Shown: positions 6,722 through 64,000 of the stretch, one piece after another
Layout: each line of letters opens with the position of its first letter
How positions within the stretch are numbered: position 1 is the stretch's first letter
NCBI GenBank assembly: GCA_002269645.1
Contig: NIVC01000109.1
Span: 545,670 to 609,669 of the forward strand
Length of the DNA stretch: 64,000 bases
Direction of reading: 5' to 3'
Source of the DNA: Macrostomum lignano
Taxonomy: Eukaryota
Made by a program: the position numbers and the translations under genes
Notes under the pieces: generated by a model
The model's input: the letters and a program-made list of their open reading frames with translations, nothing else
Databases searched by the model: none
Told to the model about the DNA's origin: nothing

Positions 6722-9700
6722 TCAGTGCTGCAAGCGACGAGACCGGCGAGGCTGTTTCGCCTGCGGCGGTTCCTCGTCGGGCGACAGATCGATAATGGAT
6801 CGATAGCGCAGCGGCCGCAGCCGGATGTTGCTTCTTCGATGCTGCTGCGTGACCTCTTTCTCTTCTTCATCTTCTTTTTCCGCCGTTTCTTGCGACAGAT
6901 TTTTGCACTTCTGCTGAGCAGATTTCCTATTCGCGGGCCTTTGATCTCGCCGACACCAGGCGCAGTTCGGCCCGGACTCCGAGTCGGCGCTGAACGACGG
7001 CTGCCGGTGCCGCCTCAGAGCCGTCGGGTGCGGCCCGGGCGACGGCCGCTCCCGCCAGGCCACGTGAGGCAGGTGGCGCTCGATGCGCGCCATAATTGGC
7101 GCCAACTGACTGCGCGTGACCAGCGTGCGGTAGCGCATGCGGCGCCACAACCTGACCGGATTTTATGTGTGGCTTGTTGAGACTGCTGCAGTTCTTTCTT
7201 TAACAGTAATTTCCACCTAGATTGGGGATTCATAACAAAAATTGCAGGAGAGACCGGAGGGTCCACATCTACTCCTAAATCCGCATTCTACTCCCCACTT
7301 TACCAAATCTACAGAAATCTACTCCCAATCTACAGAAATCTACTGCCCAATCTACAGAAATCTACTCCCCAATCTACAGAAGTCTACTCCCCAATCTACA
7401 GAAATCTACTCCCCACTTTACCAAATATACAGAAATCTACTCCCAAATCTACAGAAATCTACTGCCCAATCTACAGAAATCTACTGCCCAATCTACAGAA
7501 ATCTACTGCCCAATCTACAGAAATCTACTCCCCAATCTACTGAAATCTACTCCCCAATCTACAGAAATCTACTCCCCAATCTACAGAAGTCTACTCCCCA
7601 ATCTACAGAGATCTACTCCCCACTTTACCAAATCTACAGAAATCTACTCCCAATCTACAGAAATCTACTGCCCAATCTACAGAAATCTACTCCCCAATCT
7701 ACAGAAGTCTACTCCCCAATCTACAGAAATCTACTCCCCACTTTACCAAATATACAGAAATCTACTCCCAAATCTACAGAAATCTACTGCCCAATCTACA
7801 GAAATCTACTGCCCAATCTACAGAAATCTACTGCCCAATCTACAGAAATCTACTGCCCAATCTACAGAAATCTACTCCCCAATCTACTGAAATCTACTCC
7901 CCAATCTACAGAAATCTACTCCCCAATCTACAGAAGTCTACTCCCCAATCTACAGAAATCTACTCCCCACTTTACCAAATCTACAGAAATCTACTGCCCA
8001 ATCTACAGAAATCTACTGCCCAATCTACAGAAATCTACTGCCCAATCTACAGAAATCTACTCCCCAATCTACTGAAATCTACTCCCCAATCTACAGAAAT
8101 CTACTCCCCAATCTACAGAAACCTACTCCCCAATCTACAGAAATCTACTCCCCAATCTACAGAAATCTACTCCCCAATCTACAGAAATCTGCTCCCCAAT
8201 CTACAGAAATCTACTCCCAAATCTACTGAAATCTACTCCCCAATCTACAGAAATCTACTCCCCAATCTACAGAAATCTACTCCCAAATCTACTGAAATCT
8301 ACTCCCCAATCTACAGAAATCTACTCCCCAATCTACAGAAATCTACTCCCCAATCTACAGAAATCTACTCCCCAATCTACAGAAATCTACTCCCCAATCT
8401 ACAGAAATCTACTCCCAAATCTACAGAAATCTACGATCCCCAATCTACAGAAATCTACTGCCCAATCTACAGAAATATACTGCCCAATCTACAGAAATCT
8501 ACTCCCCAATCTACTGAAATCTACTCCCTAATCTACATAAATCTACTCCCCAATCTACTGAAATCTACTCCCCAATCTACAGAAATATACTCCCCAATCT
8601 ACAGAAATATACTCCCCAATCTACAGAAATCTACTCCCCAATCTACGGAAATCTACTCCCAAATCTACAGAAATCTACTCCCCAATCTACAGAAATATAC
8701 TCCCCAATCTACAGAAATCTACTCCCCAATCTATAGAAATCTACTCCCCAATCTACAGAAATCTACTCCCAAATCTACAGAAATCTACTCCCTAATCTAC
8801 ATAAATCTACTCCCAAATCTACAGAAATCTACTCCCTAATCTACATAAATCTACTCCCAAATCTACAGAAATCTACTCCCTAATCTACATAAATCTACTC
8901 CCAAATCTACAGAAATCTACTGCCCAATCTATAGAAATCTACTCCCCAATCTACAGAAATCTACTCCCAAATCTACAGAAATCTACTCCCTAATCTACAT
9001 AAATCTACTCCCAAATCTACAGAAATCTACTGCCCAATCTATAGAAATCTACTCCCCAATCTACAGAAATCTACTCCCAAATCTACAGAAATCTACTACC
9101 CAATCTACAGAAATCTACTACCCAATCTACAGAAATCTACTCCCAATCTACAGAAATCTACTCCCAATCTACAGAAATCTGCTGCCCAATCTACAGAAAT
9201 CTGCTCCGCAATCTACAAAACGAATTTCCCCAAAAGCCCTTTAACAACAAGCAATCCCGTGCGGCACAACGCCTCACTCAGTCCTGGCCTTGCCAGCGTG
9301 CTTCAACAGCCGGGTCCAGCGGCGGCCGAGCCAGGCGGGCAGGAGCGCCAGCCGCAGGTTGTCATATTCCTCCTCGGTCTCGTGAGCCAGCCACAGACAG
9401 GCAAAGAAATTGTTGCGATTGTACTCGCCGAGTTTGAGTCGGCAGCGGATGAAGTACACGAAAGCGATGGCCAGCAGAGTCCGGTCGGCCAGCCTCAGGC
9501 AGGAGTCGTCCAGTAGGAACTGCCGGATCACGCAGTCCTTGGCCAGCAGGTTGCCATAGTGACGCAGGCGGCGGGTCAAGTCGCCGGCCGACACCTTCGA
9601 CTCGCTGCCGGCGCCGCCGTCGTCATCCTCATCGTCGAAGTCCCGGTCGGTGCTGTCGATTCTGCAGGCTACCGGCTTGATCAAGCTGGCACTCGATGCC

Positions 9701-9969: not shown

Positions 9970-9989
9970 TGAGACAGACAGACAGAAAG

Positions 9990-10058
<69 letters not shown>

Positions 10059-10085
10059 GAAGACAGACAGACAGACAGACAGAGA

Positions 10086-10152
<67 letters not shown>

Positions 10153-10204
10153 GAAGACAGACAGACAGACAGAGAAGACAGACAGAGAAGACAGACAGAC
10201 AGAC

Positions 10205-10241
<37 letters not shown>

Positions 10242-10250
10242 CTAAGACAT

Positions 10251-10315
<65 letters not shown>

Positions 10316-10372
10316 GAAGACAGACAGACAGACAGAGAAGACAGACAGACAGACAGAGAAGACAGACAGAGA

Positions 10373-10405
<33 letters not shown>

Positions 10406-10408
10406 CTA

Positions 10409-10455
<47 letters not shown>

Positions 10456-10466
10456 CACTAAGACAT

Positions 10467-10527
<61 letters not shown>

Positions 10528-10575
10528 GAAGACAGACAGACAGACAAACAGAGAAGACAGACAGACAGACAGAGA

Positions 10576-10616
<41 letters not shown>

Positions 10617-10745
10617 CTAAAACAGACAGACAGACAGACATACAGACAGACAAACAGACACAAAGACAGACATTAAAACAGATAGATAGATAGACAGACA
10701 GACAGACAAACGGACACAGACAGATAGCGGACAGACAGACAGACA
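9970..10745. repeat. (GACA)n microsatellite with interruptions
   Basis: Direct reading. It is the source of the low-complexity VCLS/TDRQ ORFs. Confidence 0.98.
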
Positions 10746-11335: not shown

Positions 11336-11714
11336 ATCGTTCGGTAGCTAAAAATCACCCCAATGCTTGTACCTACAAAAGAACTGCTTTGAACTTTGGC
11401 ATAAAATTCTGAATAAACAGAATACTATATCTACATAAAAAATTTCTACGCTAATATTCTACAAAACTGAAGGAGAAAAGTAAACCAATATGTATATAAG
11501 ACATTCTACGTGAATAAAATATGACATGCATAGTAACTACAACATAAATTACTGATTAAGCACAACGGGCGCTTAAGCGTCAAATTGTTGCGCTTGACGC
11601 AACATACAGAGTTGCACTTTATACGCTTCATTTTTAAAATGGACTTTTAAAAAGTACAAACAGTCACGAAAAGGATGTCGCAGCTAAATTTTTCGATTTC
11701 GAATCATGTAACTC

Positions 11715-12262
11715 GAGGTCTCGTATTCGAATCCTCAAATTTGAGGTCCCGTATTCGAATCTTCAAATTCGAGGTCCCGTATTCGAATCTTCAAATTCGA
11801 GGTCCCGTATTCGAATCCTCAAATTCGAGGTCCCGTATTCGAATCCTCAAATTCGAGGTCCCGTATTCGAATCCTCAAATTCGAGGTCCCGTATTCGAAT
11901 CTTCAAATTCGAGGTCCCGTATTCGAATCCTCAAATTCGAGGTCCCGTATTCGAATCCTCAAATTTGAGGTCCCGTATTCGAATCCTCAAATTCGAGGTC
12001 CCGTATTCGAATCCTCAAATTCGAGGTCCCGTATTCGAATCCTCAAATTTGAGGTCCCGTATTCGAATCCTCAAATTCGAGGTCCCGTATTCGAATCCTC
12101 AAATTCGAGGTCCCGTATTCGAATCTTCAAATTCGAGGTCCCGTATTCGAATCCTCAAATTTGAGGTCCCGTATTCGAATCCTCAAATTCGAGGTCCCGT
12201 ATTCGAATCCTCAAATTCGAGATCCCGTATTCGAATCCTCAAATTCGAGGTCCCGTATTCCT
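11715..12262. repeat. Minisatellite, 28-bp unit attcgaatcctcaaattcgaggtcccgt
   Basis: About 19 near-identical copies. The 28-aa periodicity of ORFs 11675-11968 and 11965-12273 equals 3 units. Confidence 0.97.
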
Positions 12263-12389: not shown

Positions 12390-12771
12390 TCAAGGCAGGT
12401 ACAGCGGCACGGGCCGTCCCAGCTTCGGTTTGGAGCAGAACGGGCACTTGGAGACGCTGGCGGCGCACTGCTTGCACAAGGCGTGCCCGCAGTCCACCAG
12501 CACAACCTGGAGCGGCCGGTCAAAGCAGATGCCGCATTTCTGTTCGGACTGTGCCTGCTGAGAATTGTTCGATGATGACGTGGAGGGAGGCTGCGGCGGT
12601 CGGGGCGGTGGTGGCGGCGGTGGCGGGCCGTTTCTTCGCTGCATGAAGAGCTTGTAGGCGCGCTTCGCAGCCAGAGCCAGCAGCAGCAGCGTGGTGAGCC
12701 GGCAGGCACCTCTGAAGAAGCTGCGGGTGGTATGGGGTGTTGGGACGGCTAAGATTGGGACATAGATAGTC

Positions 12772-16733: not shown

Positions 16734-19700
16734 TTAGCTATTCATGACTTCATATATTTTAGCTACACCAGTGAGTTCTTTTCTGACTCTTTTTTCATTT
16801 GTAGCATATCCTATCTTGTGTATTTGATTGCTATTTAAGAGGTATTGACAGAAGTATTTTTTCCTGATCTCTTCAGTTTGTGGACATTCGGTCAAGTAGT
16901 GTAGAATGTCAGAACCATTTCGCGCTCCACACAATTTACATGGTTCTTGAGAAAAAAAGTTGGGTGTAATCTCGCATTTCAGTTTTAGGAGGGTTGTTAA
17001 GAATTTTTTGTTTCTAAATGTACATGGGAAGTAATCTGAAAGGTCGGGCCTGCAGATTTTTTTGTAGAGATAGGCGTTTTTGTAGAGTTTAATATGTTGC
17101 TGATTCTCTAGCTTTTGGCTAAGTTCTCTTTCTCTGTGTATCTTGAGGTGCTTTTTCACTAGGTATTTCTCGCTATTAAAGCTTTGGGAAAGTTTATCTT
17201 CAGTTAGTGCTTTTAGGTCTATACTTTCTAGTTTCTTTAGTACATTCATTTTCCATGGATTTTTTTGGCCGGTGCTTGAGTAGAAAATTTCTAGAGTCGT
17301 TTGGCAGAGTTTTTTGTGTCTAATCTTCAGCCAGTAGATGAGGTAGGTTTTAGCGATTCGTTGAGAGATTGGAGTAAGATCAAGTTCTGATGATATCACA
17401 CTGTTGCTAGCAAATTTTGGTAGATTGAGGAGATATTTGTAGAATTTCAGCTGAATATTATCAATAGCTTTTGTATCAGACATGGTAGCCAGAGGGCCCA
17501 GAGCTCACAACCGTAAGTGATAACGGGGGTAACAAGCGCGTCAAATAGTCTGCGAATGAGTGTGATGTCTAGGGACGTATTCTTTACCCTATGGAGTAGG
17601 GAAAACATGGCTGTATATCCCTGCTTAGTTTGGTGTTCAATACATTTTTTAAAGCTGTTTTTTGGTTCAAAAATAATTCCCAGGTATTTAAATTCATTTA
17701 CTTCTTCTATTTCTTGGTTGTCGTAGTATATTTTTGTAGCAATGCTAACTGTGTCGTTTTTTTTGTCTGGTATTGCCCTGCATAAACTTTGTTTTGCTTG
17801 CGTTTACTTTCAAGTAATTTTGTTTGCAGTAATTTTCCATAGTCGTAAATGTGTCTTGAAGTTCGTCTTTGTTTTTAGCTAGAATGGCTTGATCGTCTGC
17901 AAAGAGTAGGATGAGTGGGAAAGCAGATCTCGTAAGAGAGCGCCTAGCGCTAGAGAGTTCAAGATATTCAACAATGTCGTCAATATATAGTTCAAAAAGA
18001 ATGGTAGAGAGAGGGTTGCCTTGAAGAACACCTTTAGATATTGGGATTGGCTGGGTTTCATCATCATCATCATCTTTTTTTAGAATGAAGCAGGCATTTT
18101 TATGCATGTTCTTGATAAGTTCCATCATTTGACCTTTAATACCCTGATTATCCGTTTTGCACCAAAGGGTCGGTTGATTTAAGCTATCGAAGGCTTTTTC
18201 ATAGTCAACAAATCCAATAAAGAGTTCTTCTTTGTTGTAGATGGATTGGTTTATAATGTTGTAAAGATTAAAACATTGGTCGATTGTGCTATGATTGGGC
18301 TTGAAACCGTATTGGTATTTTGATATAAGATTGTTTGTGTATGCTAGGTTTTCGAGTCTGGATTTAATAATTTGGCAAAAGAGCTTGCCAAGAATTGGTT
18401 GAATGCAGATTCCTCTGTAATTGTTGGGGTCGGCACTGCTGCCTTTGTTTTTATAAATCGGAAGAAGTGTATTTGTTATCCAACTAGTTGGGAAGGTTCC
18501 TTGTTTGAGTGCTTCGTTGAAAAGTGAGCATAGGAGGTCAGCAAGTTCGTTCTCGAGGTATTTGAGTGTTTCTACATATACTTTATCGTGCCCAGGTGCT
18601 TTGTCGGTTTTGAGCTTTTTGATATGTTTTATAACTTCTTCTTTGGTGAATGGGGCATTGAAATCCTCTAAATCAGCCAGGATAGGGTTGTCAAGATGAA
18701 GATTGTATGATAGTCTAATGCTGCTGTCTTGTTCAGTTACAAGATTTTGAAAGTGTATGACAAATTTTTCATCAATTGTTACTCTGTTGTTTGAGGGATT
18801 TGGTGTTTTTAATAAGTTCCAAAGTTGTTTTGTATCGTTTTGAATAAAGGCCTGGTTGATCATGTTGTCTGCACAGAGAGTTGTTTCAAATTTCCATGAA
18901 GTGAGCTTTTTTTCGTATGCTTTTTTGAGTTGTACTTTGCTTGAGAGGTTGTTGGGAGTAGGGAAGGTTTTATATCTTCTGCAGGCATGTCTAGCAGCGT
19001 TTCTTAAATCTTTAAGGAAGCGAGGCAGTGTTGAGCATAGTGGGTTCTTTATCTCTACTGTGATGTTGTTTTGAATTTGTCTAACTTTTCTACTTAATTC
19101 ATTTATAAAAGCTGGGTTTTGTATGTCTAGATTTGTGATTTTGTCATGCATGTTTTTCAGGTCATTTGCGAAGTTATTGATATGTTTTTCTTGTTGCAGG
19201 TTGGGTTTATGTGACTTTTTTAGGACTCTGTATCTCGTTTTCGAGTTATTGGTTGCTTGTTTAGTTTCTGTGATTTCCTCTGTGAATTCAATTGATAAGG
19301 AGAGCACTATTTGGTTGTGGTCGCTAAAGTAGGTGTGGTTCTTTACTTTAAAGTCTTCGAGGTGTTGGAGTAAGCTGGTAGAGACGAAACAGAGATCTAT
19401 AACAGAGGAACCAGATTTTGAGAGAAAGGTGAATTCACCATTTGTGTCTGATAGTGATCTACCATTGATTAGATGCAGGTTGTATGAGTCAGTAATCTGG
19501 TTAAGTAGTCTACCATTTTTGCAGTTTTTCTTGTCTTGGCTTTGTCTAGTAAGTGAGATGTTTTTTGCTCTGGTGGTATATATTGAATTTAAATCTATGT
19601 ATGAGGTATTGTTTATATGAGCATTGAAGTCTCGGCCAATAAGGAAGATGTTTTCTTCGGAGTGATAAGCATCAAGGAGAATTGTTAGCTGTTCCCAATT

Positions 19701-20340
19701 TTCTTCTTCATAATATTTTGAAGACAGTGGGGGTATATAGGAGTTTATTAAGGTGAAGGTTTTGTTTTTATCCTTTTTGTGTTTAAAATTTAGCGTCAAG
19801 AAGTTTTTATAATGTTTGAATGATTCTGTAACATTGTATTGTGTATCTAGTGACTTTTTGTAAGCTGTCAATAATCCACCAGAAGCTCTGCCAACGAATT
19901 TACAGCCTTTTTTGTTTGCAGGCTTTTGGTATGTTATGTAGTTTTCAGACAGGTTGTTGATTTTGAGTCGCTTGTTTTCATTTTTTGTGTCTATTATCCA
20001 AGTTTCTTGAAAGCAGAGAATATTATTCTTAAAAATTGATTCAGTTTCCAGTAGTTCAAGTTTGGGAATCATCACAGAGTCTTTTATTGTGTAAAGACCA
20101 TTGATATTCCAGCTGCTGATAGTAAATTTTCTTTATCCATTTTTTGGATAATATTGAATTCAAGGAGTTTTGATTTGATATTGTAAGGAATTTTTTTGAT
20201 CTTTTGAGCATTGTTATTTCTAATAGAAATGAGGTACTCTCTAGTGTATTGTATCCGCTTCTCATTTGCTTTGATAATATTTTGACTATTTTGACTATTA
20301 ACTGTTGGGGTATTTAAGTCACAGTTTACAGAGGAAGTTC
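16734..20340 (-). mobile_element. LINE ORF2 (APE endonuclease + reverse transcriptase), CR1/L2 group, frameshifted
   Basis: Endonuclease motifs: WNING, LCFQETW, SGGL, YIPP, DFNAH, NGR, SVIDL, SDHN. RT motifs: APGHD, NYRGI, QYGF, FVDYEKAFDS, GVLQG, LLFADD, FKYLG, YGCELW, QLKFYK, plus a C-terminal CKLC..HYLTEC. Frameshifts near 20125, 17760 and 17490. Confidence 0.93.
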
Positions 20341-21169
20341 AGTAGGTTTTAATGAAGGGAACTCCCCTCTTATAGCCAATTCGGATGTTTTTCTCACCAT
20401 TTTCTTGACGAGTCTTAAGCTCTTTAACAATCTTCTGCTTAAATGCCCGTTCCTTTTCTGTTAAGTCGTTCTCGATCCGAATACGGGAGTAGGCAGAGCC
20501 AGTTTCGCGCAGGTTCCTCAGATTACCGAAGAAGGCCGCTTTGTCGCTATCGTTGACCAGCCGAACAACGAGGGGCCTTGGTCGATTGCTGAGAGGCTGC
20601 TCGCGACCGATCCGCCTGGTGGCGACAATTGGGACAGTTGCGGGGGACACTTTGAGCCCATCCTGCATAAAGTCCTCGAGTTTAGCGTCTTCTTGGAGAC
20701 CAAAAACTATGATGTTATTCTTCTTTATACCGCGCTGCCTGACTTCCTCCACGATTTCATCAAAGCTGATGTCGTAGGTGACAGTTTGCTTCCCACTCTC
20801 AATCGACTCTAGCTCTTCTATGCGTTCTTCGAGGGCCGTCAGCTTGACTTTGATGTCTTTAAGCAGCTCCACGCTGTTAAGAAGCGCGCGGGCATGGGTC
20901 TTGCAATCTCGGCAAGTCCATATGAGTCCATTGTCGCTAGGGCCATTTGCGATGGCGGTGAAAATTGGCTTTGCTAGGCCGGAGCAGGACTGGTGGCACC
21001 AACGGTGACAGCTTTCGCATTGAATGCCTTCGTGCACTTCGTCGTTGCAGGCTAGGCAGCTGCCATCAACAGTCTCTCGCCTTGATTTTGCGTTCGGTGG
21101 AAGGGAGATGCCTGTTGGGGATGCTTCTTGTTCTCCAACGTTGTTCTTTCGTTTGCCTTTTTGTGACAT
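20339..21169 (-). CDS. LINE ORF1 with N-terminal PHD finger, coiled coil and RRM/CTD-like region (276 aa, intact)
   Basis: C4HC3 PHD: CLAC..CESCHRWCHQSC..WTCRDC. Also KKNNIIVFGLQE, RRIGR..RPRPLVVRL and IRIENDLT, which are typical ORF1 motifs of CR1/L2-group LINEs. It lies directly upstream of ORF2. Confidence 0.9.
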   Translation of the reverse strand: MSQKGKRKNNVGEQEASPTGISLPPNAKSRRETVDGSCLACNDEVHEGIQCESCHRWCHQSCSGLAKPIFTAIANGPSDNGLIWTCRDCKTHARALLNSVELLKDIKVKLTALEERIEELESIESGKQTVTYDISFDEIVEEVRQRGIKKNNIIVFGLQEDAKLEDFMQDGLKVSPATVPIVATRRIGREQPLSNRPRPLVVRLVNDSDKAAFFGNLRNLRETGSAYSRIRIENDLTEKERAFKQKIVKELKTRQENGEKNIRIGYKRGVPFIKTY

Positions 21170-22638: not shown

Positions 22639-23027
22639 TCAATCTTCACTCGGCTTGCGCCTACCCTCTGGCGGTAAAATATGTTGATTCACAAACCATT
22701 TGCGCTGGGCGGCTATGGCGGCAAGAACCTGAAGTGAAAGTAGAAATTTTTACGACTGATTTTTATATTTACTACTATGAGTAGCTAAAAACTGGTTACA
22801 AAATGAATGCATTGACAATAGAAAATTAGTGACGGATTTACACGCACCTCCTCGGCATTGGCAAGCGAATCGGCATCTTCCTCGATGCTAGCCGGTCTTG
22901 ACAGACGAGCTTCAAAGCCTTCTCCACGGTCGGAATGCCGTTTCTGTGGCAGCGACCGGCCCTGGCAACAAGCAGCCAGGTACAACAGCGAGATCAGAAT
23001 CAAACAACTCGATGTTAACAGTTTCAT
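22639..23027 (-). CDS. Secreted prepropeptide (putative neuropeptide precursor), 2 coding exons (23027-22848, 22728-22639), 89 aa
   Basis: Signal-peptide-like MKLLTSSCLILISLLYLAACCQG, a KR site and an acidic spacer. The phase-0 intron gag|gtgcgt ... ttcacttcag|gtt gives VLAAIAAQ-RK-WFVNQHILPPE-G-RRK-PSED*. An upstream acceptor ttatttag at ~23086 implies a non-coding first exon. Confidence 0.8.
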
Positions 23028-24526
23028 TGCTGTAGATTCAATTTCCAAATACATTGGACACTGGACAGACCAAATATTTATTGGCTAAATAACAAATCGC
23101 ATTTCCTGGATTTGGTGCACGCAAAATTCAGGAGAAGCAGAGAAGCCCCGGACAGAAACCTATCATTAGATGCAAATTGAACAATAGTGAGTTGCTGAGT
23201 GAGCATATTAATGAAAAAAATTGACGAAAGCGCGGTGCGCGAACAAATTTCTGACAAGATAATTACAAGCCTGTCAGCTCAATTGTCATTGTTAACATTG
23301 CCAGAGCTAGTCAAGCCATTCAAGCCAGATATACACTGCTGCTGAAATAGGAATTTTACACCGAGATCAGGCTGTAGGATTCAAAAATATCCTGGATTTC
23401 TTCGGGACACTTAAAGAAATCTGGTCAGTTTGAAAGCAGGAAAAACTTACCTTATTGGCTAATGCAGATACAGTCTAGCAAATGCAGCAGCCCCTACAAT
23501 GCACAGACGAAAAAGGTAGAACATATGAATCAGGAAAAACACAGCAGTTGACATATTTAAAATATTAAATATAGAGTAGAACAGAATCAGATTTGTTTTT
23601 CACGTCAGTGAAATGTTGGACAACTGAGCGGCTAGAAATGTGCACAATCAACAAAAGCCTGCAAGTCTGCATGAGCCACAATTCTATGCAATGTTCGAGT
23701 CAATGTATGGATGCAAGCAATTGCTAGAACTTATTGTACTTGCATTCTCTTCGTAACTCGTTGATTGAAAAAAAAACTGTAAAATTGTCTGTAGCTCACT
23801 AATTGTCTCGAATCTGATGCTGTAAAATAGTAAATGAGACCAGTATTGACTTGCAGACTGGTGCAATGTGCACAACTCTGCTGCATCAAGTGTCAACTCA
23901 GACCTTTTACTCATTCATCATTTATTGAATATTTTAAAAACTTTGCAAACAAATTAGCAATAAAAAGAAATAAATGGCACTAAAAAATAAAAAGCTTACC
24001 ATAAATAAGCCTTTTGACCATCTGGCAACAATCGTTGCATACTCCCAATGTACTACTAATAGTAGAACTAATTAGGACATATTTGCACCTGGAATTTTAT
24101 TTAAACAGAGTTTTATGCCTAGTTTGAAAAACAGTATTTGGATTTCAACAAAAAGCATAAAGTTTGGTATAAATAACACATTTATAGCCTTATCATAAGT
24201 CTTCCAATTTCAGAAAAAACCAAATATAAAACTTACTGTGTTAACTATTAAGTGAATTTAAGCATGCTAGCAGCCAAACACTGGGTAAATTGTCATTGAT
24301 AAATAAGCTATAGAATATATAATTTAGTTTCCCTATATTCCCAAAATTCTGAATTCCCTATATTCCCAATTTAGTTTCCCAAAATTTCCCTTATTTTTAA
24401 CTATAATTGCAACTATATAATGTAAAAAACCTAGCATAAAAGTGTAGATAGACTAATGAACATGAGTATACAATTTCTAGATCTATTATATTAGATTTCT
24501 ATTACTTTGGATAAATATAACAATAT

Positions 24527-34612: not shown

Positions 34613-37600
34613 ATGAGCGAGACAGCAAAGGGCCAGCAGCAGCAGGCAAAGACGCCTGACAAGCATCCACCGGAAGTCGAAGTGACAGCCGAAGGGGAGC
34701 TGCTATATCAGGGCTTCTATCCGGTGGTCTTGAGGTTCCTGCACCAGCGACATCCGGTCAGATCGTGGTGCCTTCGAGCCATCACATGGCCATATCCTTT
34801 CTGTCTTGTTTTTTTAGCTTGTTTGATTGCATTTTTGTTACCTATGGTGCTATTTAGGATATTTTTATCGGTCTATAAGCCTCAAAAGGATTAAGGCAGT
34901 TTAATTCAGTTGGTGTAGCGAATTAAACTGTCTTTTTTTCAGAATCGGATGCATTAACCACTGTGCTGCTCTGCCTCCTGGTTCGTGGGTCAAGTGTTTT
35001 TATGATTAAGAAAGTGATAGCATTGTTTTACAGCAGACAGTCTAAATTATTTCTCATCATTGTCAACCGTAGAGAGAACTGGACGAAAATCCCAATTTAA
35101 TTAACCTTATGATTACCAGTGGCATGCTGTGCATGCCATCGTTCATTCTGTCAATTGCTCTCAGCAGTGACAAATGAGTCATCGCTCGACTCATTGCTCG
35201 ATTCGCTGTCGAGGCCCAAGTTTCGCAAGGCTTGCTTGGCTGCTTGCCGTCGCTGTCTGACCGCTTGCATTGTAACATTTGGTAAGCTGGGGTGATGAGC
35301 TAAGGAGGCACGAGTAAAATTATGGTAGTTAATTTTTCATGTCTGTATTTTCTCTCTTTTGTCTTTTTTCTAGCTTGGCCATAGACTATTCTCCAGTCAA
35401 AGATGTCACTTCTCCTGTTGAGAAAGCGTTTTCTTGCCTGTGCATAATAAAGCAACTGTTTTGAAATTCGAAGTGTACAGCGCAGATCTAAATTGTCTAT
35501 GGCATGCACTGCTTGCCATTTGGTAAGATAGAGATGTGGGGAGGAATTCTGTCGTAGACTAGTGGTTAAAAGAGCTGTTCAACACTGCTCATCATTCTAC
35601 CCCAAGTCATTTCCTCGATGCAATTTTCAATTAAAATCCTCCCTCATAGCAGGGAAGGGCAGAAAAGTTCGTTTGGGATTTTCGCGGGAAAAAAGTGATT
35701 ATTCTTGGAATGATCACTGGGGCACTGGGGTCAAATGCCAAAGCATTGGTCAAGCAGTGAGTTCTGGAGGCATTCAAATTTTAGCGAACCGCATGGCACA
35801 CGGCTGGGAGGGTGAGGACTGAGAGAGGTGGCACGAGACGCAGTGTGGGTCGGTTGTCCCAATTTGACTTATTGGTTGGCGAGAACCGCTGCCACAGGGC
35901 AATAGTGCAGGAACAGCAACAGCAGAACGCATCCGCCTGAGAGAGACTGAGCTGAGGCCTTTGTCTTCGCCTCATGGAGTCGGGCTGAGCCCAAGGGGAT
36001 GAGGGAGCAGGGAGGGACGAGGCAAAAGGATGCTCTCTGACCCAGAGCTGCAGCAAGCAGGTTTGGGACTGGTGGCTGACCGTCACATCAAATTCCACTC
36101 CATTACCGTGGGGTCGTGAGGTCTGAGTTGGCTTGGGAAAAATGCCCAGTTTTTATTCCTCTGAGTTCCCTTCGTGTTCTCGCAACTGTTTTATGTCTTA
36201 AAATACGTTCTTCTACATGCCGACCTTGTCCACTTGTCAACTTGTGATTCCACTTGTGCCTTCCGTTTGAGAAATGAGGGGGACCTTGCATCCCTATAGC
36301 CTCCCTGTGCGTGTTGTTCTGACTGTTATCCTATTTGAGTTTTCCTCCCAATACAATCTGCTCAACCAAGTGGGCAGCAGCTTCTGCAATTAACCATTAG
36401 TAGGTTGTCAGCAGTCGGGCAGGCAAACCTCGAGATTTGAAGGAAATGAAAATTCTGCAAAGCTTTCGTTCAATTCCAATTTCGTAGCTTCTGAATGGGG
36501 TTGATTGGGAATTTCAATTTTCTTTCATTTCTGCGGCAATCTCTCCATGCAGAAGGAGTCTGCAAGAATGGATTTAATTTCATAATTTTTCTCCTCTACG
36601 TAGTTCTCAGTCGGCGATATATATAGGAAGGCTTTGGGATAGGACGTCTTATCATATTCTTGATTTCCGGGATCAAACCTCTACGTTAGCTGAGTGTTAT
36701 ATGAGGGGGGGGGGTTCACTACTGGGCCTCTTTCAGTTCAGAACCAGGCACTTGGAAAGAGGCCAGACAGGCTGGGAGAAGGGATCAGTCCCTACTGTAC
36801 TTCCTCATTTGCCCACAACGGGGCAACTGCTTTTAATTGATTTGAAAAATCGTTCTGCACATGGAATTGAGCCCATCGTGAGAGATTGAGGGGAATTCGG
36901 GGGGGGGGGGTATTAGACCGAGGATAAGGAAGCTGAGAGGCTGAGTGGCTGCTTCAGCAGTGTTGTTGCGACGCCCTACCTGTACTTGGCAACAAAATTG
37001 GCAACCCGACTGAAGTCGCATTCGAGAGTCTATCTCGGTTCCGCTTCGCTAATTTCCTTCTCTGAGGGGCCCAAGGTTATGAAGAGGAAACTGGCAACAA
37101 AGTCAAGTCTAGACTTTGGCCTGCAGCTTAGCGTTAAGCATCATCATTTAATGAATAGGGATATGGAATGAGAGAGGCTGAGAGATTAGGAAGGATAGAA
37201 GATAAGAGATGGGTGGATTGGGGTGAGAGATGGGATGGTAGAGGGTGAGAGATGAGAGGGTAGAAGGTGAGAGATGGGAGGGTAGAGGTGAGAGATGGGA
37301 TGGTAGAGGGTGAGAGATGGGATGGTAGAGGGTGAGAGATGAGAGGGTAGAGGGTAGAGGGTGAGAGATGGGAGGGTAGAGGGTGAGAGATGGGATGGTA
37401 GAGGGTGAGAGATGGGATGGTAGAGGGTGAGAGATGGGAGGGTAGAGGGTGAGAGATGGGAGGGTAGAGGGTGAGAGATGGGAGGGTAGAGGGTGAGAGA
37501 TGGGAGGGTAGAGGGTGAGAGATGGGAGGGTAGAGGGTGAGAGATGGGAGGGTAGTGGGTGAGAGATGGGAGGGTAGAGGGTGAGAGATGGGATGGTAGA

Positions 37601-40600
37601 GGGTGAGAGATGGGAGGCAGACAGAAGAGGTTGTGTCAGAAGGCCAGAAGTCTCTCCTGTATTCTCGTGAACTCAAAGCTCCGCTGTGATGATGTCACTA
37701 CTGAAATAATAGGGAGCAAGAGGATGAGCTCGTGCCGATGTAATCAAGGTGGGTGAAGATGGGATAGAATTTAAAGGAGAAAAATGTGCAATAGTGCAGC
37801 AGTCCCAGCTAGAAGCCTGTTCCGGACAACCTGAGGCGGGTGGCTGCTCAGCGCTCTCTTATGCAGCCTGAGCTGAAGCCCCTCGTTTGGCCTTTTTGCC
37901 ACCTCCGTGCCTCACGTTTGCCTCCTTCCTCCCCTCCCTACCCTTCTGCTCTGGGCAACTAATGGCTTGATGCTGCTGCAGTTCCTCCCCCTAGCCTTCG
38001 TCTCTCAGCCTCCTCCTTTTGCGCTTCATCTGTAGTCTGTCGGGCAGATCGTGTTGCAGACTCTCTCTTGCTAAATAGCTTGCATGTTTCAAAATTTGTT
38101 TTGCAAAAGCAAATGTTCCTTAACGCGTATTAAGGGCCCAGGTGTGATGATTGGTAAAAATGGTTAAATAGCAGATTCAGCAAAGGCAGGCACAGGCACC
38201 CGTCACAACCACCGGGTTGGCCGCAAAATGCCAAGCTATAAGATTGCTTCGACAACAAGCCAGTGAGTGAGAATAGAAGAACGTTGAGTCAGCCTCCCTT
38301 AGTACCTCATCCGAACTGGTATGGGAGCTGGCATTGGGATACAGACAGCAGCGAGGATGAGGGACTGAAGGGAAGCCGAGAGGCGAGGGGAGAAAGGGCT
38401 AGGAAGATAACTATAGAGAATTGGGGCTGGCAGTCAGTCACACAGTGGCAGACTGAAGGCTGAGAACAGGAGGGGGAGATGAGGTCGGGGGAAACTGCTG
38501 CTGCCAACTGCATCACGGTAGACTTCAGGAGTTCTGGGCATTGTCCCCCAGAGTCGGTGACAAAGGCAAACAGGCATATGGGAGAAAACTGAGAGAGGAT
38601 TCAGCAAAGGAAAAATATGTTTACTTGAATATACATTTATGCCATCAAATGAAATTTCACATATCACCTCATGTTGGTTTAGATGGAATCAGCGGGTGAG
38701 AAATTAATGGAGAAGGTGAGTGACACAGGGAAAATAGAGGATGAGAGTCACTCAGAGAACGGCAGGCAGATGAGGTGAGAGTCACTCAGAAAACGGCAGG
38801 CAGATGAGGTGAGAGTCACTCCAGGAACGGCAGGCAGATGAGGTGAGAGTCACTCAGAAAACGGCAGGCAGATGAGGTGAGAGTCACTCCAAGAACGGCA
38901 GGCAGATGAGATGAGAGTCACTCCAAGAACGGCAGGCAGATGAGGTGAGAGTCACTCCAAGAACGGCAGGCAGAGGAGGTGAGAGTCACTCAGAGAACGG
39001 CAGGCAGATGAGGTGAGACTGAGAGTCACTCCAAGAACGGCAGGCAGAGGAGGTGAGAGTCACTCCAAGAACGGCAGGCAGATGAGGTGAGAGTCACTCA
39101 GAGAACGGCAGGCAGATGAGGTGAGACTGAGAGTCACTCCAAGAACGGCAGGCAGATGAGATGAGAGTCACTCCAAGAACGGCAGGCAGAGGAGGTGAGA
39201 GTCACTCCGAGAACGGCAGGCAGATGAGGTGAGAGTCACTCCAAGAACGGCAGGCAGAGGAGGTGAGAGTCACTCCAAGAACGGCAGGCAGAGGAGGTGA
39301 GAGTCACTCAGAGAACGGCAGGCAGATGAGGTGAGAGTCACTCCAAGAACGGCAGGCAGAGGAGGTGAGAGTCACTCCAAGAACGGCAGGCAGAGGAGGT
39401 GAGAGTCACTCCAAGAACGGCAGGCAGATGAGGTGAGAGTCACTCCAAGAACGGCAGGCAGAGGAGGTGAGAGTCACTCCAAGAACGGCAGGCAGAGGAG
39501 GTGAGAGTCACTCCAAGAACGGCAGGCAGATGAGGTGAGAGTCACTCCGAGAACGGCAGGCAGATGAGGTGAGAGTCACTCCAAGAACGGCAGGCAGAGG
39601 AGGTGAGAGTCACTCCAAGAACGGCAGGCAGATGAGGTGAGAGTCACTTTGAGAACGGCAGGCAGATCTGGTAGCGACACACAGCAGTGGTGAAAGTTGC
39701 TAACAGGACAAGCGGAAGACACACGGCAGGACCAAAATTAGCATAAGTATCAGGCGGCAAAATGCCCCGAGGGGGGGGGGGAGGCTCGTCCCGGTTGCAG
39801 CCAAGGCTCCCCCGGTCTTGCCACTGCTTTGGGAATCAAATAAGTCCTGCTGCTCCTGACTGCGGTGCTTTTTCATTCCTTGTTTTTTTTATTTTTTTGC
39901 CTCAGCTTTCCGTCACGAAAAGCCCGCGGCAGTTCGAGGCGTGTGGAGGAAAAAAGTCGCAGTGCAAAGCAGCAGAGTTTGCGCTTTTTATTTTCAGCCT
40001 GCTTCCCCTGTTTGCATTGTTGTGGAAGTCTGGCACGCATTTTTGGTAGGTGGAATTGTTTATTATCGGCACCGGGTCACTCTGCGGACCGTCACTGGCT
40101 TTGAGAACTTTTATCGCTCGTTGGATCGCTGAAAAACTTTAATACCGCATGAGTTTTGCAATTTGGTTTGGTAATTATTGATGAAACAATTCAAGCTAAC
40201 AATTAATGATGCCGTTACCTTTCTTCTACTGGCTGACTCATTTTCTCATCACACCCATTTGTCTCTTATCTCACGTTCCTGTAACTCATCTCACCCTCCA
40301 GTCTCTAATCTCACGCTTCAGTCTCTAATCTCACCCTCTAGTCTCTAATCTCACACTCCAGTCTTTAAACTCACGCTCCAGTCTCTAATCTCACCCTCCA
40401 GTCTCTAATCTCACCCTCCAGTCTCTAATCTCACCCTCCAGTCTCTAATCTCACCCTCCAGTCTTTAAACTCACGCTCCAGTCTCTAATCTCACCCTCCA
40501 GTCTCTAATCTCACGCTCCAGTCTCTAATCTCACGCTCCAGTCTCTAATCTCACCATTCAGTCTCTAATCACACCCATTTGTCTCTTATCTCACGTTCCT

Positions 40601-43600
40601 GTAACTCATCTCACCCTCCAGTCTCTAATATAACGCTCCAGTCTCTAATCTCACCATCCAGTCTCTAATCTCACCATCCAGTCTCTAATCATACCCATTT
40701 GTCTCTTATCTCACGTTCCTGTAACTCATCTCACCCTTCAGTCTCTAATCTCACGCTTCAGTCTCTAATCTCACACTCCAGTCTCTAATCTCACTCTCCA
40801 GTCTCTAATCTCACCCCCTGTCTCTAATCTCACACTCCAGTCTCCTATCTCACACTCCAGTCTCTAATCTCACCCTCCTGTCTCTAATCTCACACTCAAG
40901 TCTTTAATCTCACACTCCAGTCTCTAATCTCACCCTCCAGTCTCTAATCTCACCCTCTAGTCTCTAATCTCACCCTCCAGACTCTAATCTCACCCTCCAG
41001 TCTCTAATCTCACACTACAGTCTCCAATCTCACACTCCAGTCTCCAATCTCACACTCCAGTCTCTAATCTCACTCTCCAGTCTCTAATCTCACCCTCCTG
41101 TCTCTAATCTCACACTCCAGTCTCTAATCTCACACTACAGTCTTTAATCTCACTCTCCTGTCTGTAATCTTTTTCCAATCTCTTATCTCATCCGATTGTC
41201 TGATCTGACCAATCTCATGCTTACGAAATTCATCTCAACATCAGTCTCTCATCTCACCTAGGAAAGAACAGATATCAAAGAGATATAACTTTGAAACTTT
41301 TTAGGATGTCAGTAAAATAGTGACAAAAATGAAGCGTTTGATTTCACTTAGAAATTTTCCTTAACCAACAAAACTTCGAAAAATGCATCTGGCTGCACTT
41401 GGTTCGAGCGAGTCAGCATCTGCGTAATTCTCATCAACTGCATCACTCTGGGCATGTACCGACCCTGCGAGGATGAGCAGTGCTCAATGACCCGCTGTCA
41501 GATCCTGTTCGGATTCGACCACGCCGTTTTTGCCTTCTTCGCAATCGAAATGCTTGTCAAAGTCGTTGCCATGGGCTTTCTTGGAAAGCTGGGCTATCTG
41601 GGAGATTCTTGGAATCGACTGGACTGCTTCATCGTTTTGGCTGGGTGAGTTGTAGCATTGCCATCTTTAATATTCGCCTGTTCCAACCTTCCAACGTTTT
41701 TAGACTGTATTGAAGGCCTGTCAACTTTTCTATGATTTAAAGGCCTGTCACACTCCTGATTTTTAAAAGCCTGTCACCCTTCACTGTTTTGAAGGCCTGT
41801 CACCCTTCACTGTTTTGAAGGCCTGTCACCATTCAGTGTTTTGAAGGCCTGTCACCATTCAGTGTTTTGAAGGCCTGTCATCCTTGACTGTTTTGAAGGC
41901 CTATCACCATTCAGTGTTTTGAAGGCCTGTCACCCTTGACTGTTTTGAAGGCCTATCACCCTTCAGTGTTTTGAAGGCCTATCACCCTTCAGTGTTTTGA
42001 AGGCCTGTCACCCTTGACTGTTTTGAAGGCCTATCACCCTTCAGTGTTTTGAAGGCCTGTCACCCTTGACTGTTTTGAAGGCCTATCACCATTCAGTGTT
42101 TTGAAGGCTTATCACCCTTCAGTGTTTTGAAGGCCTGTCACCCTTGACTGTTTTGAAGGCCTATCACCATTCAGTGTTTTGAAGGCCTATCACCATTCAG
42201 TGTTTTGAAGGCCTATCACCATTCAGTGTTTTGAAGGCCTGTCACCCTTCACTGTTTTGAAGGCCTGTCACCTTACACTGTTTTGAAGGCCTGTCACCTT
42301 ACACTGTTTTGAAGGCCTGTCACCTTACACTGTTTTGAAGGCCTGTCACCTTACACTGTTTTGAAGGCCTGTCACCTTACACTGTTTTGAAGGCCTGTCA
42401 CCATTCACTGTTTTGAAGGACTATCACCCTTCACTGTTTTGAAGGCCTGTCACCATTCACTGTTTTGAAGGCCTGTCACCCTTCACTGTTTTGAAGGCCT
42501 GTCACCCTTCACTGTTTTGAAGGCCTGTCAACTCGCCCCGCTTGATACCCGAAATTGCATCGATTCCACCCAAGCCGACTCAAACAAGAATCTACTTAGA
42601 CTTAGGCTAGCAGATTCTCGGCTCCAGTTGCCGCAGTCTTGAATAGATCAGGCAGAGCTGGAACCGGTTGTTAGGCCGAGCTCATGACTAAGGGATAAGA
42701 TCCTGGACTCGGATTCTGGTCCCCAGGGGGCTGCAAGATGAAGGTGGGGAGAGGGAGAAGGAGGCCGTTCGAGCTCGTCGGCTCATTGATAATTCAAAGA
42801 ATTGTCGCTTTTCGGCGTTACTCAAATGTCTTCGTCTCGGAGACCGTCTCAGTTCCTTCTCTTTTCCTGGCCAGCGGCTGCCCTGGCCAGCTTTGTTGAA
42901 CTGGGCTCAGGCACTTCACCTACACATTTTTAGCTCCTTTTTCTGACCCTTCATGCCCTGCATTCCTCCCTTCATCTGACCCTTCATTCCCTTCATTTCT
43001 CCCTTCATCTGACCCTTCATTTGATCCATTCCTCCCTTCATCTGATTCTTCATTTGATCCATTTCTTCCTTATATGACCCTTCCTTCCTATATTTGACCC
43101 TTCATTCCCTTCATCTAATCCTTCATTCCCTTCATCTGAACCTTCATTCCCTTTTCTGACGCTTCATTCTTTTCATCTGACCTTTCCTTTTTCTGCTGTT
43201 CTTATTAGCTTTCCTAATAGTTGAGTAATTTTATCCTGTCACTCCCCTGAACAGAACCTTGGAGTACCTGCCGCAGACCAAGGACCTGAGTCTAACAGCC
43301 ATTCGAACCATTCGCGTACTGAGGCCTCTCCGAGCCATCAACCGCATTCCAAGTGAGCTTTCTTCCATAGAAATTTACTAGTGCATACCTATCTGACTGA
43401 ATACCTGCCTAAATACCTGTCTCAGTACCTGTTTAAATATCTGTCTGAATACCTTTTTGAATACCTGTGTGAATACCTGTTTAAATACCTGTCTGAATAC
43501 GTGTCCAAACAAATGTTTAAATAATTGTCTCAATACCTTTTTGAATACCTGTCTGAATATCGTTTAAATACCTGTTCTGCATACCTTTTTAAATACCTGA

Positions 43601-62512: not shown

Positions 62513-62547
62513 GTGAGTGAGAATTGGCATCAAGGTTATTTCCAGCA

Positions 62548-64000
62548 ACACTATTATCGACACTATTAACCGAAACTATTACCGACACTATTAGCCGACA
62601 CTATTAGCCAACACTATTAACCGACACTATTACCGACACTATTAACCGACACTATTAACTGACACTATTAACCGACACTATTAACCGACACTTTTACCAA
62701 CACTATTAACCGACACTATTAACCGACACTATTAACCGACACTATTAACCGACACTATTACCGACACTATTACCGACACTATTACCGACACTATTACCGA
62801 CACTATTAACCGACACTATTACCGACACTATTAACCGACACTATTAACCGACACTATTAACCGACACTATTAACCGACACTATTACCGACACTATTACCG
62901 ACACTATTAACCGACACTATTACCGACACTATTAACCGACACTATTAACCGACACTATTACCGACACTATTACCGACGCTATTAACCGACACTATTAACC
63001 GACACTATTACCAACACTATTAACCGACACTATTAACCGACACTATTAACTGACACTATTAACCGACACTATTAACCGACACTTTTACCAACACTATTAA
63101 CCGACACTATTAACCGACACTATTACCAACACTATTAACCGACACTATTAACCGACACTATTAACTGACACTATTAACCGACACTATTAACCGACACTTT
63201 TACCAACACTATTAACCGACACTATTAACCGACACTATTACCGACACTATTACCGACACTATTAACCGACACTATTACCGACACTATTACCGACACTATT
63301 ACCAACACTATTAACCGACACTATTAACCGACACTATTACCGACACTATTACCGACACTATTAACCGACACTATTACCGACACTATTAACCGACACTATT
63401 AACCGACACTATTACCGACACTATTACCGACGCTATTAACCGACACTATTAACCGACACTATTACCAACACTATTAACCGACACTATTACCGACACTATT
63501 AACCGACACTATTAACCGACACTATTACCGACACTATTAACCGACACTATTACCGACACTATTAACCGACACTATTACCGACACTATAACCGACACTATT
63601 AGCCGACACTATTAACCGACACTATTAACCGACACTATTAGCCGACACTATTAGCCGACACTATTACCGACACTATTAACCGACACTATTAACCGACACT
63701 ATTAACCGACACTATTACCGACACTATAACCGACACTATTAGCCGACACTATTAACCGACACTATTAACCGACACTATTAACCGACACTATTAACCGACA
63801 CTATTAACCGACACTATTAGCCGACACTATTAACCGACACTATTAGCCGACACTATTAACCGACACTATTAGCCGACACTATTACCGACACTATTAACCG
63901 ACACTATTAACCGACACTATTAACCGACACTATTACCGACACTATAACCGACACTATTAGCCGACACTATTAACCGACACTATTAACCGACACTATTAAC
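62548..64000. repeat. 12/13-bp minisatellite (a)ccgacactatta, running off the window
   Basis: More than 100 copies downstream of the last visible Cav3 exon. Confidence 0.98.

What the first reader, a model, noticed from the sequence alone, without database searches (positions are those of the whole stretch)
22639..23027. Hidden two-exon neuropeptide-type precursor predicting an amidated peptide WFVNQHILPPE-NH2
Seen in sequence: the ORF track shows only exon 1. Splicing the 119-nt GT-AG intron (22847-22729) gives MKLLTSSCLILISLLYLAACCQG-RSLPQ-KR-HSDRGEGFEARLSRPASIEEDADSLANAEEVLAAIAAQ-RK-WFVNQHILPPE-G-RRK-PSED*. Established knowledge: a signal peptide, basic convertase sites, an acidic spacer and Gly followed by basic residues form the canonical layout for PAM/PHM-PAL amidated neuropeptides. 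Inference: I do not recognise WFVNQHILPPEamide as a member of any known family, so it may be a new or lineage-specific signalling peptide. The spacer peptide begins HSD, like secretin/VIP/PACAP peptides, but this may be coincidence.
Basis: partly seen in the sequence, partly recalled or inferred. Interest (0 to 1): 0.82.

Follow-up and report, generated by a model that had tools for sequence, protein, structure and literature searches.

The report
Candidate amidated-peptide precursor gene, Macrostomum
This is a real two-exon gene of the flatworm Macrostomum lignano that encodes an 89-residue secreted protein laid out like a neuropeptide precursor; the gene model is already public but unstudied, and the predicted peptide is plausible, unproven and has no detectable relatives.

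Summary

The window is Macrostomum lignano. The gene is not hidden. The same spliced product, started 9 codons upstream, is UniProt A0A1I8G828. Three copies 95-99% identical are also public, one of them GenBank PAA67118.1, which comes from an RNA-seq-derived annotation.

UniProt's automatic name, 'Gastrin domain-containing protein', is not supported: there is no Pfam hit, no CCK motif and no BLASTP similarity. The 'HSD' secretin-like start is at chance level and reads HAD in the sister copies.

No relative was found outside M. lignano. I checked 1.84 billion representative proteins, PDB, Pfam, the 51 planarian prohormones and the literature.

The layout is signal peptide, KR, acidic spacer, RK, an 11-mer, G-RRK and a short acidic tail. 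It fits an amidated-peptide prohormone and arises in about 2% of shuffles. A Glu-amide peptide has been detected by MS in a planarian. No RK-flanked peptide has, so the peptide's N-terminus is the weakest step.

Expression site, processing and cross-species conservation could not be tested. Verdict: a plausible orphan neuropeptide candidate of modest interest.

The parts
23025..23027 (-). Probable start codon (MKLL...), Kozak-like context G at -3 and A at +4
   Evidence: It gives a canonical signal peptide with n-region MK. Public models instead use the upstream ATG.
23052..23054 (-). Upstream in-frame ATG used by the UniProt/GenBank models (adds MYLEIESTA); weak context (C at -3, T at +4)
   Evidence: The longest-ORF convention of TransDecoder explains the choice. 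Which ATG is used is untested.
23070..23088 (-). CCAAT plus TAAATAT (TATA-like) motif about 45-60 nt upstream of ATG 23027; possible core promoter
   Evidence: Sequence only; inference, not tested.
22959..23027 (-). Predicted signal peptide MKLLTSSCLILISLLYLAACCQG (23 aa), with cleavage after C-Q-G by the -3/-1 rule
   Evidence: Hydropathy peak of 2.9 over residues 9-17. AF2 helix at residues 3-21. SignalP was not available.
22848..23027 (-). Exon 1 (60 codons): signal peptide, RSLPQ, KR, and most of the acidic spacer
22729..22847 (-). GT-AG intron, 119 nt, phase 0, 30% GC (114 nt in the sister locus L001)
22639..22728 (-). Exon 2 (29 codons plus TGA): VLAAIAAQ-RK-WFVNQHILPPE-G-RRK-PSED*
   Evidence: It is 100% identical in L001.
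22666..22698 (-). Codons of the predicted mature peptide WFVNQHILPPE, followed by Gly (22663-22665) and RRK (22654-22662)
   Evidence: The amidated monoisotopic [M+H]+ is 1378.727. Processing is inferred.
22884..22934 (-). Variable part of the spacer: all 7 nucleotide differences from the sister copy fall here and change 5 amino acids, with no silent codon change

Best explanation
This is a genuine two-exon Macrostomum lignano gene encoding an 89-aa preproprotein that enters the secretory pathway and is processed like a peptide prohormone. The inferred steps are as follows. Signal peptidase cuts after residue 23. A PC2-type convertase cuts at KR(29-30), RK(69-70) and RRK(83-85). A carboxypeptidase trims the basic residues. 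Gly82 is then converted by the flatworm PHM/PAL enzymes into a C-terminal amide. The product is WFVNQHILPPE-NH2, together with RSLPQ, a 38-residue acidic spacer peptide and PSED. The amidated C-terminal peptide is the likely signalling product, acting on an unknown receptor. Shown here: the gene structure, the public transcript-derived model of a sister copy, the motif layout and the absence of relatives. Inferred: secretion, every cleavage, amidation, cell type and signalling role.
For: The spliced ORF and splice signals are present, with a GC contrast between exons and intron. The exact product and three copies 95-99% identical are in UniProt/GenBank with the same junction. The GenBank Mlig_3_7 annotation is built from RNA-seq and de novo transcripts plus TransDecoder (PMC5730564), so a sister copy is transcribed and spliced this way. 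There is a hydrophobic N-terminal helix with a small -1/-3 site and no Cys after it. The cassette dibasic-11mer-G-tribasic near the C-terminus occurs in 1.9% of shuffles. The signal peptide and exon 2 are invariant among four copies, apart from one P->S in one copy, and all other changes sit in the spacer. There is a flatworm precedent for the unusual Glu-amide: Smed SPP-10 GAEFFLQRVE-amide was detected by MS/MS and reduced after pc2 RNAi (PMC2953531 supplement).
Against: There are no data on expression site, peptide or receptor. The four copies are about 97.5% identical at DNA level in coding and non-coding sequence alike. Zero changes in the 90-nt exon 2 against about 1.8 expected is not significant. 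RK is a poor convertase site: none of the MS-validated planarian peptides is RK-flanked and none has a GRR amidation site. AF2 places RK in the middle of a continuous helix at residues 48-76 (single sequence, pLDDT 66). The motif enrichment is only about 2%, and it was found after reading a whole window.
Confidence: 0.5

Rival explanations
1. It is a secreted but non-signalling orphan protein, for example a gland, adhesive, antimicrobial or seminal-fluid product. Such proteins are typically small, secreted and fast-evolving. The dibasic and Gly-basic motifs would be fortuitous and the protein would act largely unprocessed.
For: There are no homologues outside the species. All inter-copy substitutions are amino-acid changing and clustered, as in fast-evolving secreted proteins. 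Motif enrichment is only about 2% by shuffling. A long amphipathic helix at residues 48-76 is predicted.
Against: The Gly-tribasic site sits just before a short acidic C-terminal tail, and the absence of cysteines is the classic prohormone layout. The gene id was absent from the held parts of the supplements of PMC5816591 and PMC7336406, two M. lignano gene-list papers on stem-cell/germline and reproduction-related genes. This is a weak negative because the files are truncated.
Confidence: 0.25
2. It is a prohormone, but RK(69-70) is not cleaved. The amidated product would then be long: up to the 51-mer HSDRGEGF...WFVNQHILPPE-NH2, or a fragment starting after a monobasic Arg such as PASIEED...PPE-NH2. 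It would be a helical peptide rather than an 11-mer.
For: No RK-flanked peptide occurs among the MS-validated planarian peptides. RK lies inside a predicted continuous helix at residues 48-76. KR(29-30) and G-RRK are the two strongest sites.
Against: The N-terminal 18 residues of that 51-mer are the most variable part among copies (5 substitutions), which is atypical for a bioactive end. The segment is strongly acidic, like a spacer. There is no similarity to any long amidated hormone family.
Confidence: 0.15
3. It is a member of the gastrin/cholecystokinin/sulfakinin family, as the automatic UniProt name 'Gastrin domain-containing protein' implies.
For: The name given by UniRef. The layout resembles progastrin and proCCK: an amidated peptide at the extreme C-terminus followed by G-RR and a short acidic flanking peptide (...GRRKPSED versus ...GRRSAEDEN; vertebrate sequences recalled from memory).
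Against: There is no hit to Pfam Gastrin PF00918, or to any Pfam family, at E<=10. BLASTP to human preprogastrin and preproCCK finds nothing beyond the signal peptide. The pro-region contains no Tyr, no G-W/H-M-D/R-F motif and no C-terminal Phe-amide.
Confidence: 0.02
4. It is a young, lineage-restricted transcript or ORF with no selected function (transcriptional noise or a proto-gene), kept intact in four copies only because the genome duplication is recent.
For: There is no homologue anywhere. CDS divergence between copies (7/297 nt) equals the neutral flank rate, with no silent codon change.
Against: Exon GC is far above that of the surroundings. The signal peptide and splice signals are clean. 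The ORF is intact in all four copies. The substitutions avoid the signal peptide and exon 2 (0 in 247 nt against about 5-6 expected at the flank rate of about 2 per 100 nt; own arithmetic).
Confidence: 0.08

Closest known systems
Orphan flatworm prohormones of the npp/spp type (Schmidtea mediterranea, Collins et al. 2010), e.g. Smed-spp-10/npp-18
   Same: Small (about 80-100 aa) precursors with a signal peptide, an acidic N-terminal spacer, dibasic-flanked short peptides with Gly-basic amidation sites and a short C-terminal tail. SPP-10 yields an MS-verified Glu-amide peptide, GAEFFLQRVE-NH2.
   Different: There is no sequence similarity. None of the motifs PPEG, PEG[KR][KR], NQHI or WFV occurs in the 51 planarian prohormones. 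Planarian sites are KR/KK and GKR rather than RK and GRRK. This gene encodes a single peptide copy.
Gastrin/cholecystokinin precursors (Pfam PF00918), the source of the automatic UniProt name
   Same: Precursor size and architecture: one amidated peptide at the C-terminal end, followed by G-RR and a short acidic flanking peptide.
   Different: The hormone core (sulfated Tyr, G-W-M-D-F-NH2) is entirely absent. There is no Pfam or BLASTP similarity.
Secretin/VIP/PACAP/glucagon peptides (Pfam PF00123)
   Same: The sequence reads H-S-D immediately after a KR site. Scattered matches (F-x-x-x-L-S-R; F-V-N near the C-terminus) are noticeable by eye.
   Different: Local alignment scores are reached by 25-34% of shuffles. 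There is no Pfam hit. HSDR is HADG in the sister copies. The spacing is about 18 residues too long and the segment is acidic.
Insulin B chain N-terminus (FVNQHLCGSHL...)
   Same: The pentamer FVNQH is identical (seen through).
   Different: There are no cysteines in the pro-region and no A or C chains. It is a 5-mer coincidence.

Membership tests
Amidated neuropeptide / peptide-hormone precursor (generic class) | N-terminal signal peptide | tested here: met
   The n-region is MK, the hydrophobic core covers residues 3-19 and C-Q-G lies at -3..-1. AF2 predicts a helix at residues 3-21. This is heuristic only, with no SignalP.
Amidated neuropeptide / peptide-hormone precursor (generic class) | Peptide flanked by basic convertase sites, with Gly before the C-terminal basic site | tested here: met
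   The sites are KR 29-30, RK 69-70 and G82-RRK 83-85. The cassette occurs in 1.9% of shuffles.
Amidated neuropeptide / peptide-hormone precursor (generic class) | Conservation of the mature peptide and cleavage sites across species, with a faster-evolving spacer | tested here: inconclusive
   Only four within-species copies are available, at 97.5% DNA identity. The pattern is in the right direction (spacer variable, cassette invariant) but has no statistical power. No orthologues were found.
Amidated neuropeptide / peptide-hormone precursor (generic class) | Expression in neurons or endocrine cells with pc2/PHM, and the mature peptide detected | not testable with these tools
   No RNA-seq, in situ or MS data are reachable. 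The gene id is absent from searchable text.
Gastrin/CCK/sulfakinin | Match to the family profile (Pfam PF00918) | tested here: not met
   hmmscan found 0 families at E<=10 for both the 89-aa and 98-aa forms.
Gastrin/CCK/sulfakinin | C-terminal Y-x-G-[WH]-M-[DR]-F-amide core | tested here: not met
   There is no Tyr after the signal peptide and the C-terminus is ...ILPPE-G. BLASTP to human progastrin and proCCK (sequences from memory) found nothing.
Secretin/glucagon/VIP superfamily | Match to Pfam PF00123, or significant alignment to family peptides | tested here: not met
   There is no Pfam hit. The best local score of 25-26 is reached by 25-34% of shuffles (panel sequences from memory).
Secretin/glucagon/VIP superfamily | Conserved N-terminal H-S/A-D/E-G-x-F activation motif | tested here: not met
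   The window copy reads HSDRGEGF and the sister copies read HADGGEGF. Positions 2 and 4 differ between copies and Phe is displaced by two residues.
Insulin/relaxin | Six-cysteine framework in the B and A chains | tested here: not met
   There are no Cys residues after the signal peptide.

The most novel reading that the evidence does not exclude
The gene is a macrostomid-restricted, possibly de novo-born, peptidergic signal. WFVNQHILPPE-NH2 (Glu-amide, cleaved at an unusual RK site) would be a bona fide neuropeptide with its own receptor and no counterpart in other bilaterians. An even bolder variant, for which I found no statistical support, is that the uncleaved 51-residue HSD...PPE-NH2 helix is a protostome ligand of a class-B (secretin-type) receptor. 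I put that variant at about 2%.
Probability: 0.3. Interest if true: 0.5.

Novelty: new member of a known kind. Interest (0 to 1): 0.3.

Why it matters
If validated, this would add a lineage-specific amidated neuropeptide to Macrostomum lignano, a transgenic, RNAi-tractable flatworm model. It would give a clean case of a single-copy, two-exon prohormone with an unusual Glu-amide end and RK site. That is useful for studying how new peptidergic signals arise and for training neuropeptide predictors on flatworms. It would also correct a misleading automatic database name ('Gastrin domain-containing protein'). As it stands, it is one of many unvalidated orphan candidates that any invertebrate genome contains.

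Tried and rejected
1. Word-indexed search of 5.8 billion proteins and an exhaustive phmmer search of 1.84 billion representatives found only the gene's own M. lignano cluster. Two further hits (P0005, P0006) are repeat proteins. P0005 is an 898-aa ORF on an ENA metagenome contig, with about 12 copies of TGEGFQAELSRPA matching the spacer motif GEGFEARLSRPA at about 25 bits each. By my estimate a 10-of-12 match is expected by chance in 2.4e11 residues, and the E-value is inflated by the repeats. I rejected it as homology.

2. Pfam and PDB sequences gave nothing.

3. Exact-product look-ups for spliced transcripts in public assemblies found none on record. Only the GenBank genome copy was found.

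4. Literature searches found nothing: the 11-mer and its sub-strings, 'PPEamide'-type names, the gene id Mlig005444, and M. lignano neuropeptide surveys. McVeigh 2009 (PMC2749192) and Koziol 2016, the two flatworm-wide neuropeptide surveys, are not held. A prior listing there cannot be excluded.

5. The supplements of two M. lignano gene-list papers do not contain the id, but the orthogroup file is truncated.

6. Similarity to gastrin/CCK and to secretin/glucagon was tested and rejected.

7. No paralogue exists elsewhere in the window (tblastn), and there is no Rfam RNA at the locus.

8. The AF2 single-sequence model is only moderately confident (pLDDT 66). I used it as a secondary-structure hint and did not run a fold search.

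Full report
**What is in the sequence**

On the minus strand an ATG at 23027 opens a 60-codon exon (23027..22848). The exon ends GAG|GTGCGT. A 119-nt intron (22847..22729; 30% GC against 52-54% in the exons) ends in a pyrimidine-rich TTTCTACTTTCACTTCAG. The next 29 codons (22728..22642) run to TGA at 22641-22639.

The mechanical ORF list shows only the read-through ORF 22785..23054. No competing long ORF lies on the plus strand. No Rfam family matches the locus. There is no second copy in the window.

**Organism and prior annotation**

The protein search returned one cluster, all from the flatworm Macrostomum lignano. The exact window product, begun at an in-frame ATG nine codons upstream (23054; MYLEIESTA+MKLL...), is UniProt A0A1I8G828.

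Three further copies are public:
- A0A1I8GWV9, which reads ...HILSPE...
- A0A1I8GGS3
- GenBank PAA67118.1, 'hypothetical protein BOX15_Mlig005444g1'

These copies are 95-99% identical to the window product. The GenBank copy lies on NIVC01001505.1 (locus L001). It has the same GT..AG junction with a 114-nt intron.

That annotation was built from RNA-seq and de novo transcripts (StringTie, TACO, TransDecoder; PMC5730564). A sister copy is therefore supported by assembled, spliced transcripts. So the gene is real and already modelled, but it is uncharacterised. I found no paper that mentions the peptide or the gene id.

**Start codon**

The public models take the longest ORF. It yields a textbook signal peptide (MK, a 17-residue hydrophobic core, C-Q-G). 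A CCAAT/TAAATAT motif at 23088-23070 would place a transcription start near or after the upstream ATG. This is inference from sequence only.

**Is the prohormone layout more than chance?**

After the signal peptide the 66-residue pro-region has no cysteine. It contains KR (29-30), RK (69-70) and G82-RRK (83-85). A dibasic-X(4-25)-Gly-dibasic cassette occurs in 1.9% of shuffles of this pro-region.

Among the four copies, all differences except one P->S in one copy fall in residues 41-57 of the 98-aa numbering, which is the spacer. The signal peptide and exon 2 are otherwise invariant.

The copies are homeologues or alleles at 97.5% DNA identity through coding and non-coding sequence alike. Flanks show about 2 mismatches per 100 nt. 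Exon 1 shows 7 mismatches in 207 nt, and they change five amino acids with no silent codon change. Exon 2 shows 0 in 90 nt against about 1.8 expected. The pattern points the right way but has no statistical weight.

**Search for relatives**

The following searches found nothing:
- An exhaustive phmmer search against 1.84 billion representative proteins found nothing beyond the own cluster and two repeat proteins.
  - One of these, P0005, carries about 12 copies of TGEGFQAELSRPA, which match the spacer motif GEGFEARLSRPA at about 25 bits per copy.
  - I judge this a chance match inflated by the repeats.
- Pfam gave no hit at E<=10.
- PDB sequences gave none.
- The 51 Schmidtea prohormones of Collins et al. 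2010 contain none of PPEG, PEG[KR][KR], NQHI or WFV.
- No 'PPEamide' family name exists in the searchable literature.

Two flatworm-wide surveys (McVeigh 2009; Koziol 2016) are not held, so a prior listing there cannot be excluded.

**Named resemblances tested**

1. UniProt's automatic 'Gastrin domain-containing protein'. The precursor shares only the layout: a C-terminal amidated peptide, then G-RR, then a short acidic tail. It lacks the Tyr and G-W-M-D-F core. It has no Pfam PF00918 hit and no BLASTP similarity to human progastrin or proCCK (vertebrate sequences from memory). It is not a member.

2. The 'HSD' start. The sister copies read HADG instead of HSDR, and there is no Pfam PF00123 hit. 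The best local alignment to twelve secretin/glucagon-family peptides is matched by 25-34% of shuffles. This is chance.

3. FVNQH equals the N-terminus of the mammalian insulin B chain. There are no cysteines here, so it is coincidence.

**How it most likely works**

The sequence of events is inferred from the established prohormone pathway:
- Signal peptidase cuts after the signal peptide.
- A PC2-type convertase cuts at the basic sites.
- A carboxypeptidase trims the basic residues.
- PHM/PAL amidates, using Gly82.

The products would be RSLPQ, a 38-residue acidic spacer, WFVNQHILPPE-NH2 and PSED.

A Glu-amide end is unusual but has a direct flatworm precedent. Smed SPP-10 GAEFFLQRVE-NH2 was sequenced by MS/MS, and its signal fell after pc2 RNAi.

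The weakest step is the RK cut. In the planarian MS tables the N-terminal flanks are KR, KK and rarely RR, never RK. Amidation sites are GKR or GR, never GRR. AF2 (single sequence, mean pLDDT 66) puts RK inside one continuous helix at residues 48-76. A longer amidated product is therefore a live alternative.

**Rivals**

The explanations, with my confidence in each, are:
- The main reading: a prohormone yielding the amidated 11-mer, 0.5.
- A secreted but non-signalling, fast-evolving orphan protein (gland or seminal-fluid type), 0.25.
- A prohormone whose RK site is not cleaved, giving a longer amidated product, 0.15.
- A functionless young ORF, 0.08.
- True gastrin/CCK membership, 0.02.

**Verdict**

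It is a plausible orphan amidated-peptide precursor of M. lignano, already present in public annotation under an uninformative or misleading name. Cell type, processing and conservation are all untested. It is a new member of a known kind, of modest interest (0.3).

Noticed in passing
window 16734-21169 (-): A non-LTR retrotransposon lies about 1.5 kb downstream of the gene. It has long intact ORFs: a 776-aa ORF with endonuclease and reverse transcriptase domains (17745-20075), an upstream 276-aa ORF1-like protein with weak PHD/C1 zinc-finger hits (20339-21169), and a 249-aa ORF (16734-17483). It is absent from the sister locus L001 (5.6 kb in the window against 1.4 kb there), so it is a recent insertion specific to this copy.
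   Followed up: partly
P0005 / L002 6001-8697 (ENA metagenome contig ERZ26273096): An 898-aa Ala/Pro/Ser-rich ORF carries about 12 tandem copies of ...ARTVTGEGFQAELSRPA.... These match the precursor's spacer motif GEGFEARLSRPA in 10 of 12 positions. I judged this a repeat-inflated chance match. The source organism is unknown.
   Followed up: partly
window 22681-22695 (-), peptide residues FVNQH: The predicted peptide contains FVNQH, which is identical to the first five residues of the mammalian insulin B chain. There are no cysteines, so this is a coincidence, but it will produce spurious hits in peptide searches.
   Followed up: yes
window 9274-9560 (-) and L001 18368-20411: A Spy1/RINGO cell-cycle regulator exon (Pfam PF11357, E=1e-18) adjoins a long (AGAC)n microsatellite at 9972-10745 that reads as a continuous 'SVCL' pseudo-ORF. 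The same neighbour gene is present at the sister locus.
   Followed up: partly
window 12390-12700 (-): An exon encodes a C3HC4 RING finger (Pfam zf-C3HC4_3, E=1e-11), next to a (CAGA)n array.
   Followed up: no
window 44758-60340 (+): There are exons of a voltage-gated cation channel (Pfam Ion_trans, E=9e-32, at 57409-57906; further candidate exons at 44758-45192, 46621-46720 and 60000-60340). The segment [13 protein letters not shown] looks like the I-II loop of T-type (Cav3) calcium channels; this is from memory and not tested.
   Followed up: partly
window 7306-9217, 11698-12260, 37173-49097, 55544-64000: There are more than 25 distinct minisatellite arrays with periods of 9-45 bp and up to about 57 copies at the 25-bp period (62548-64000; about 115 if counted at the alternative 13-bp period), many within the introns of the channel gene. 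This is an unusually dense tandem-repeat landscape.
   Followed up: no
window 2641-4173 (+): A GC-rich degraded reverse-transcriptase fragment (RVT_1, below Pfam's cutoff) is present, a different element from the AT-rich retrotransposon at 16.7-21.2 kb.
   Followed up: no
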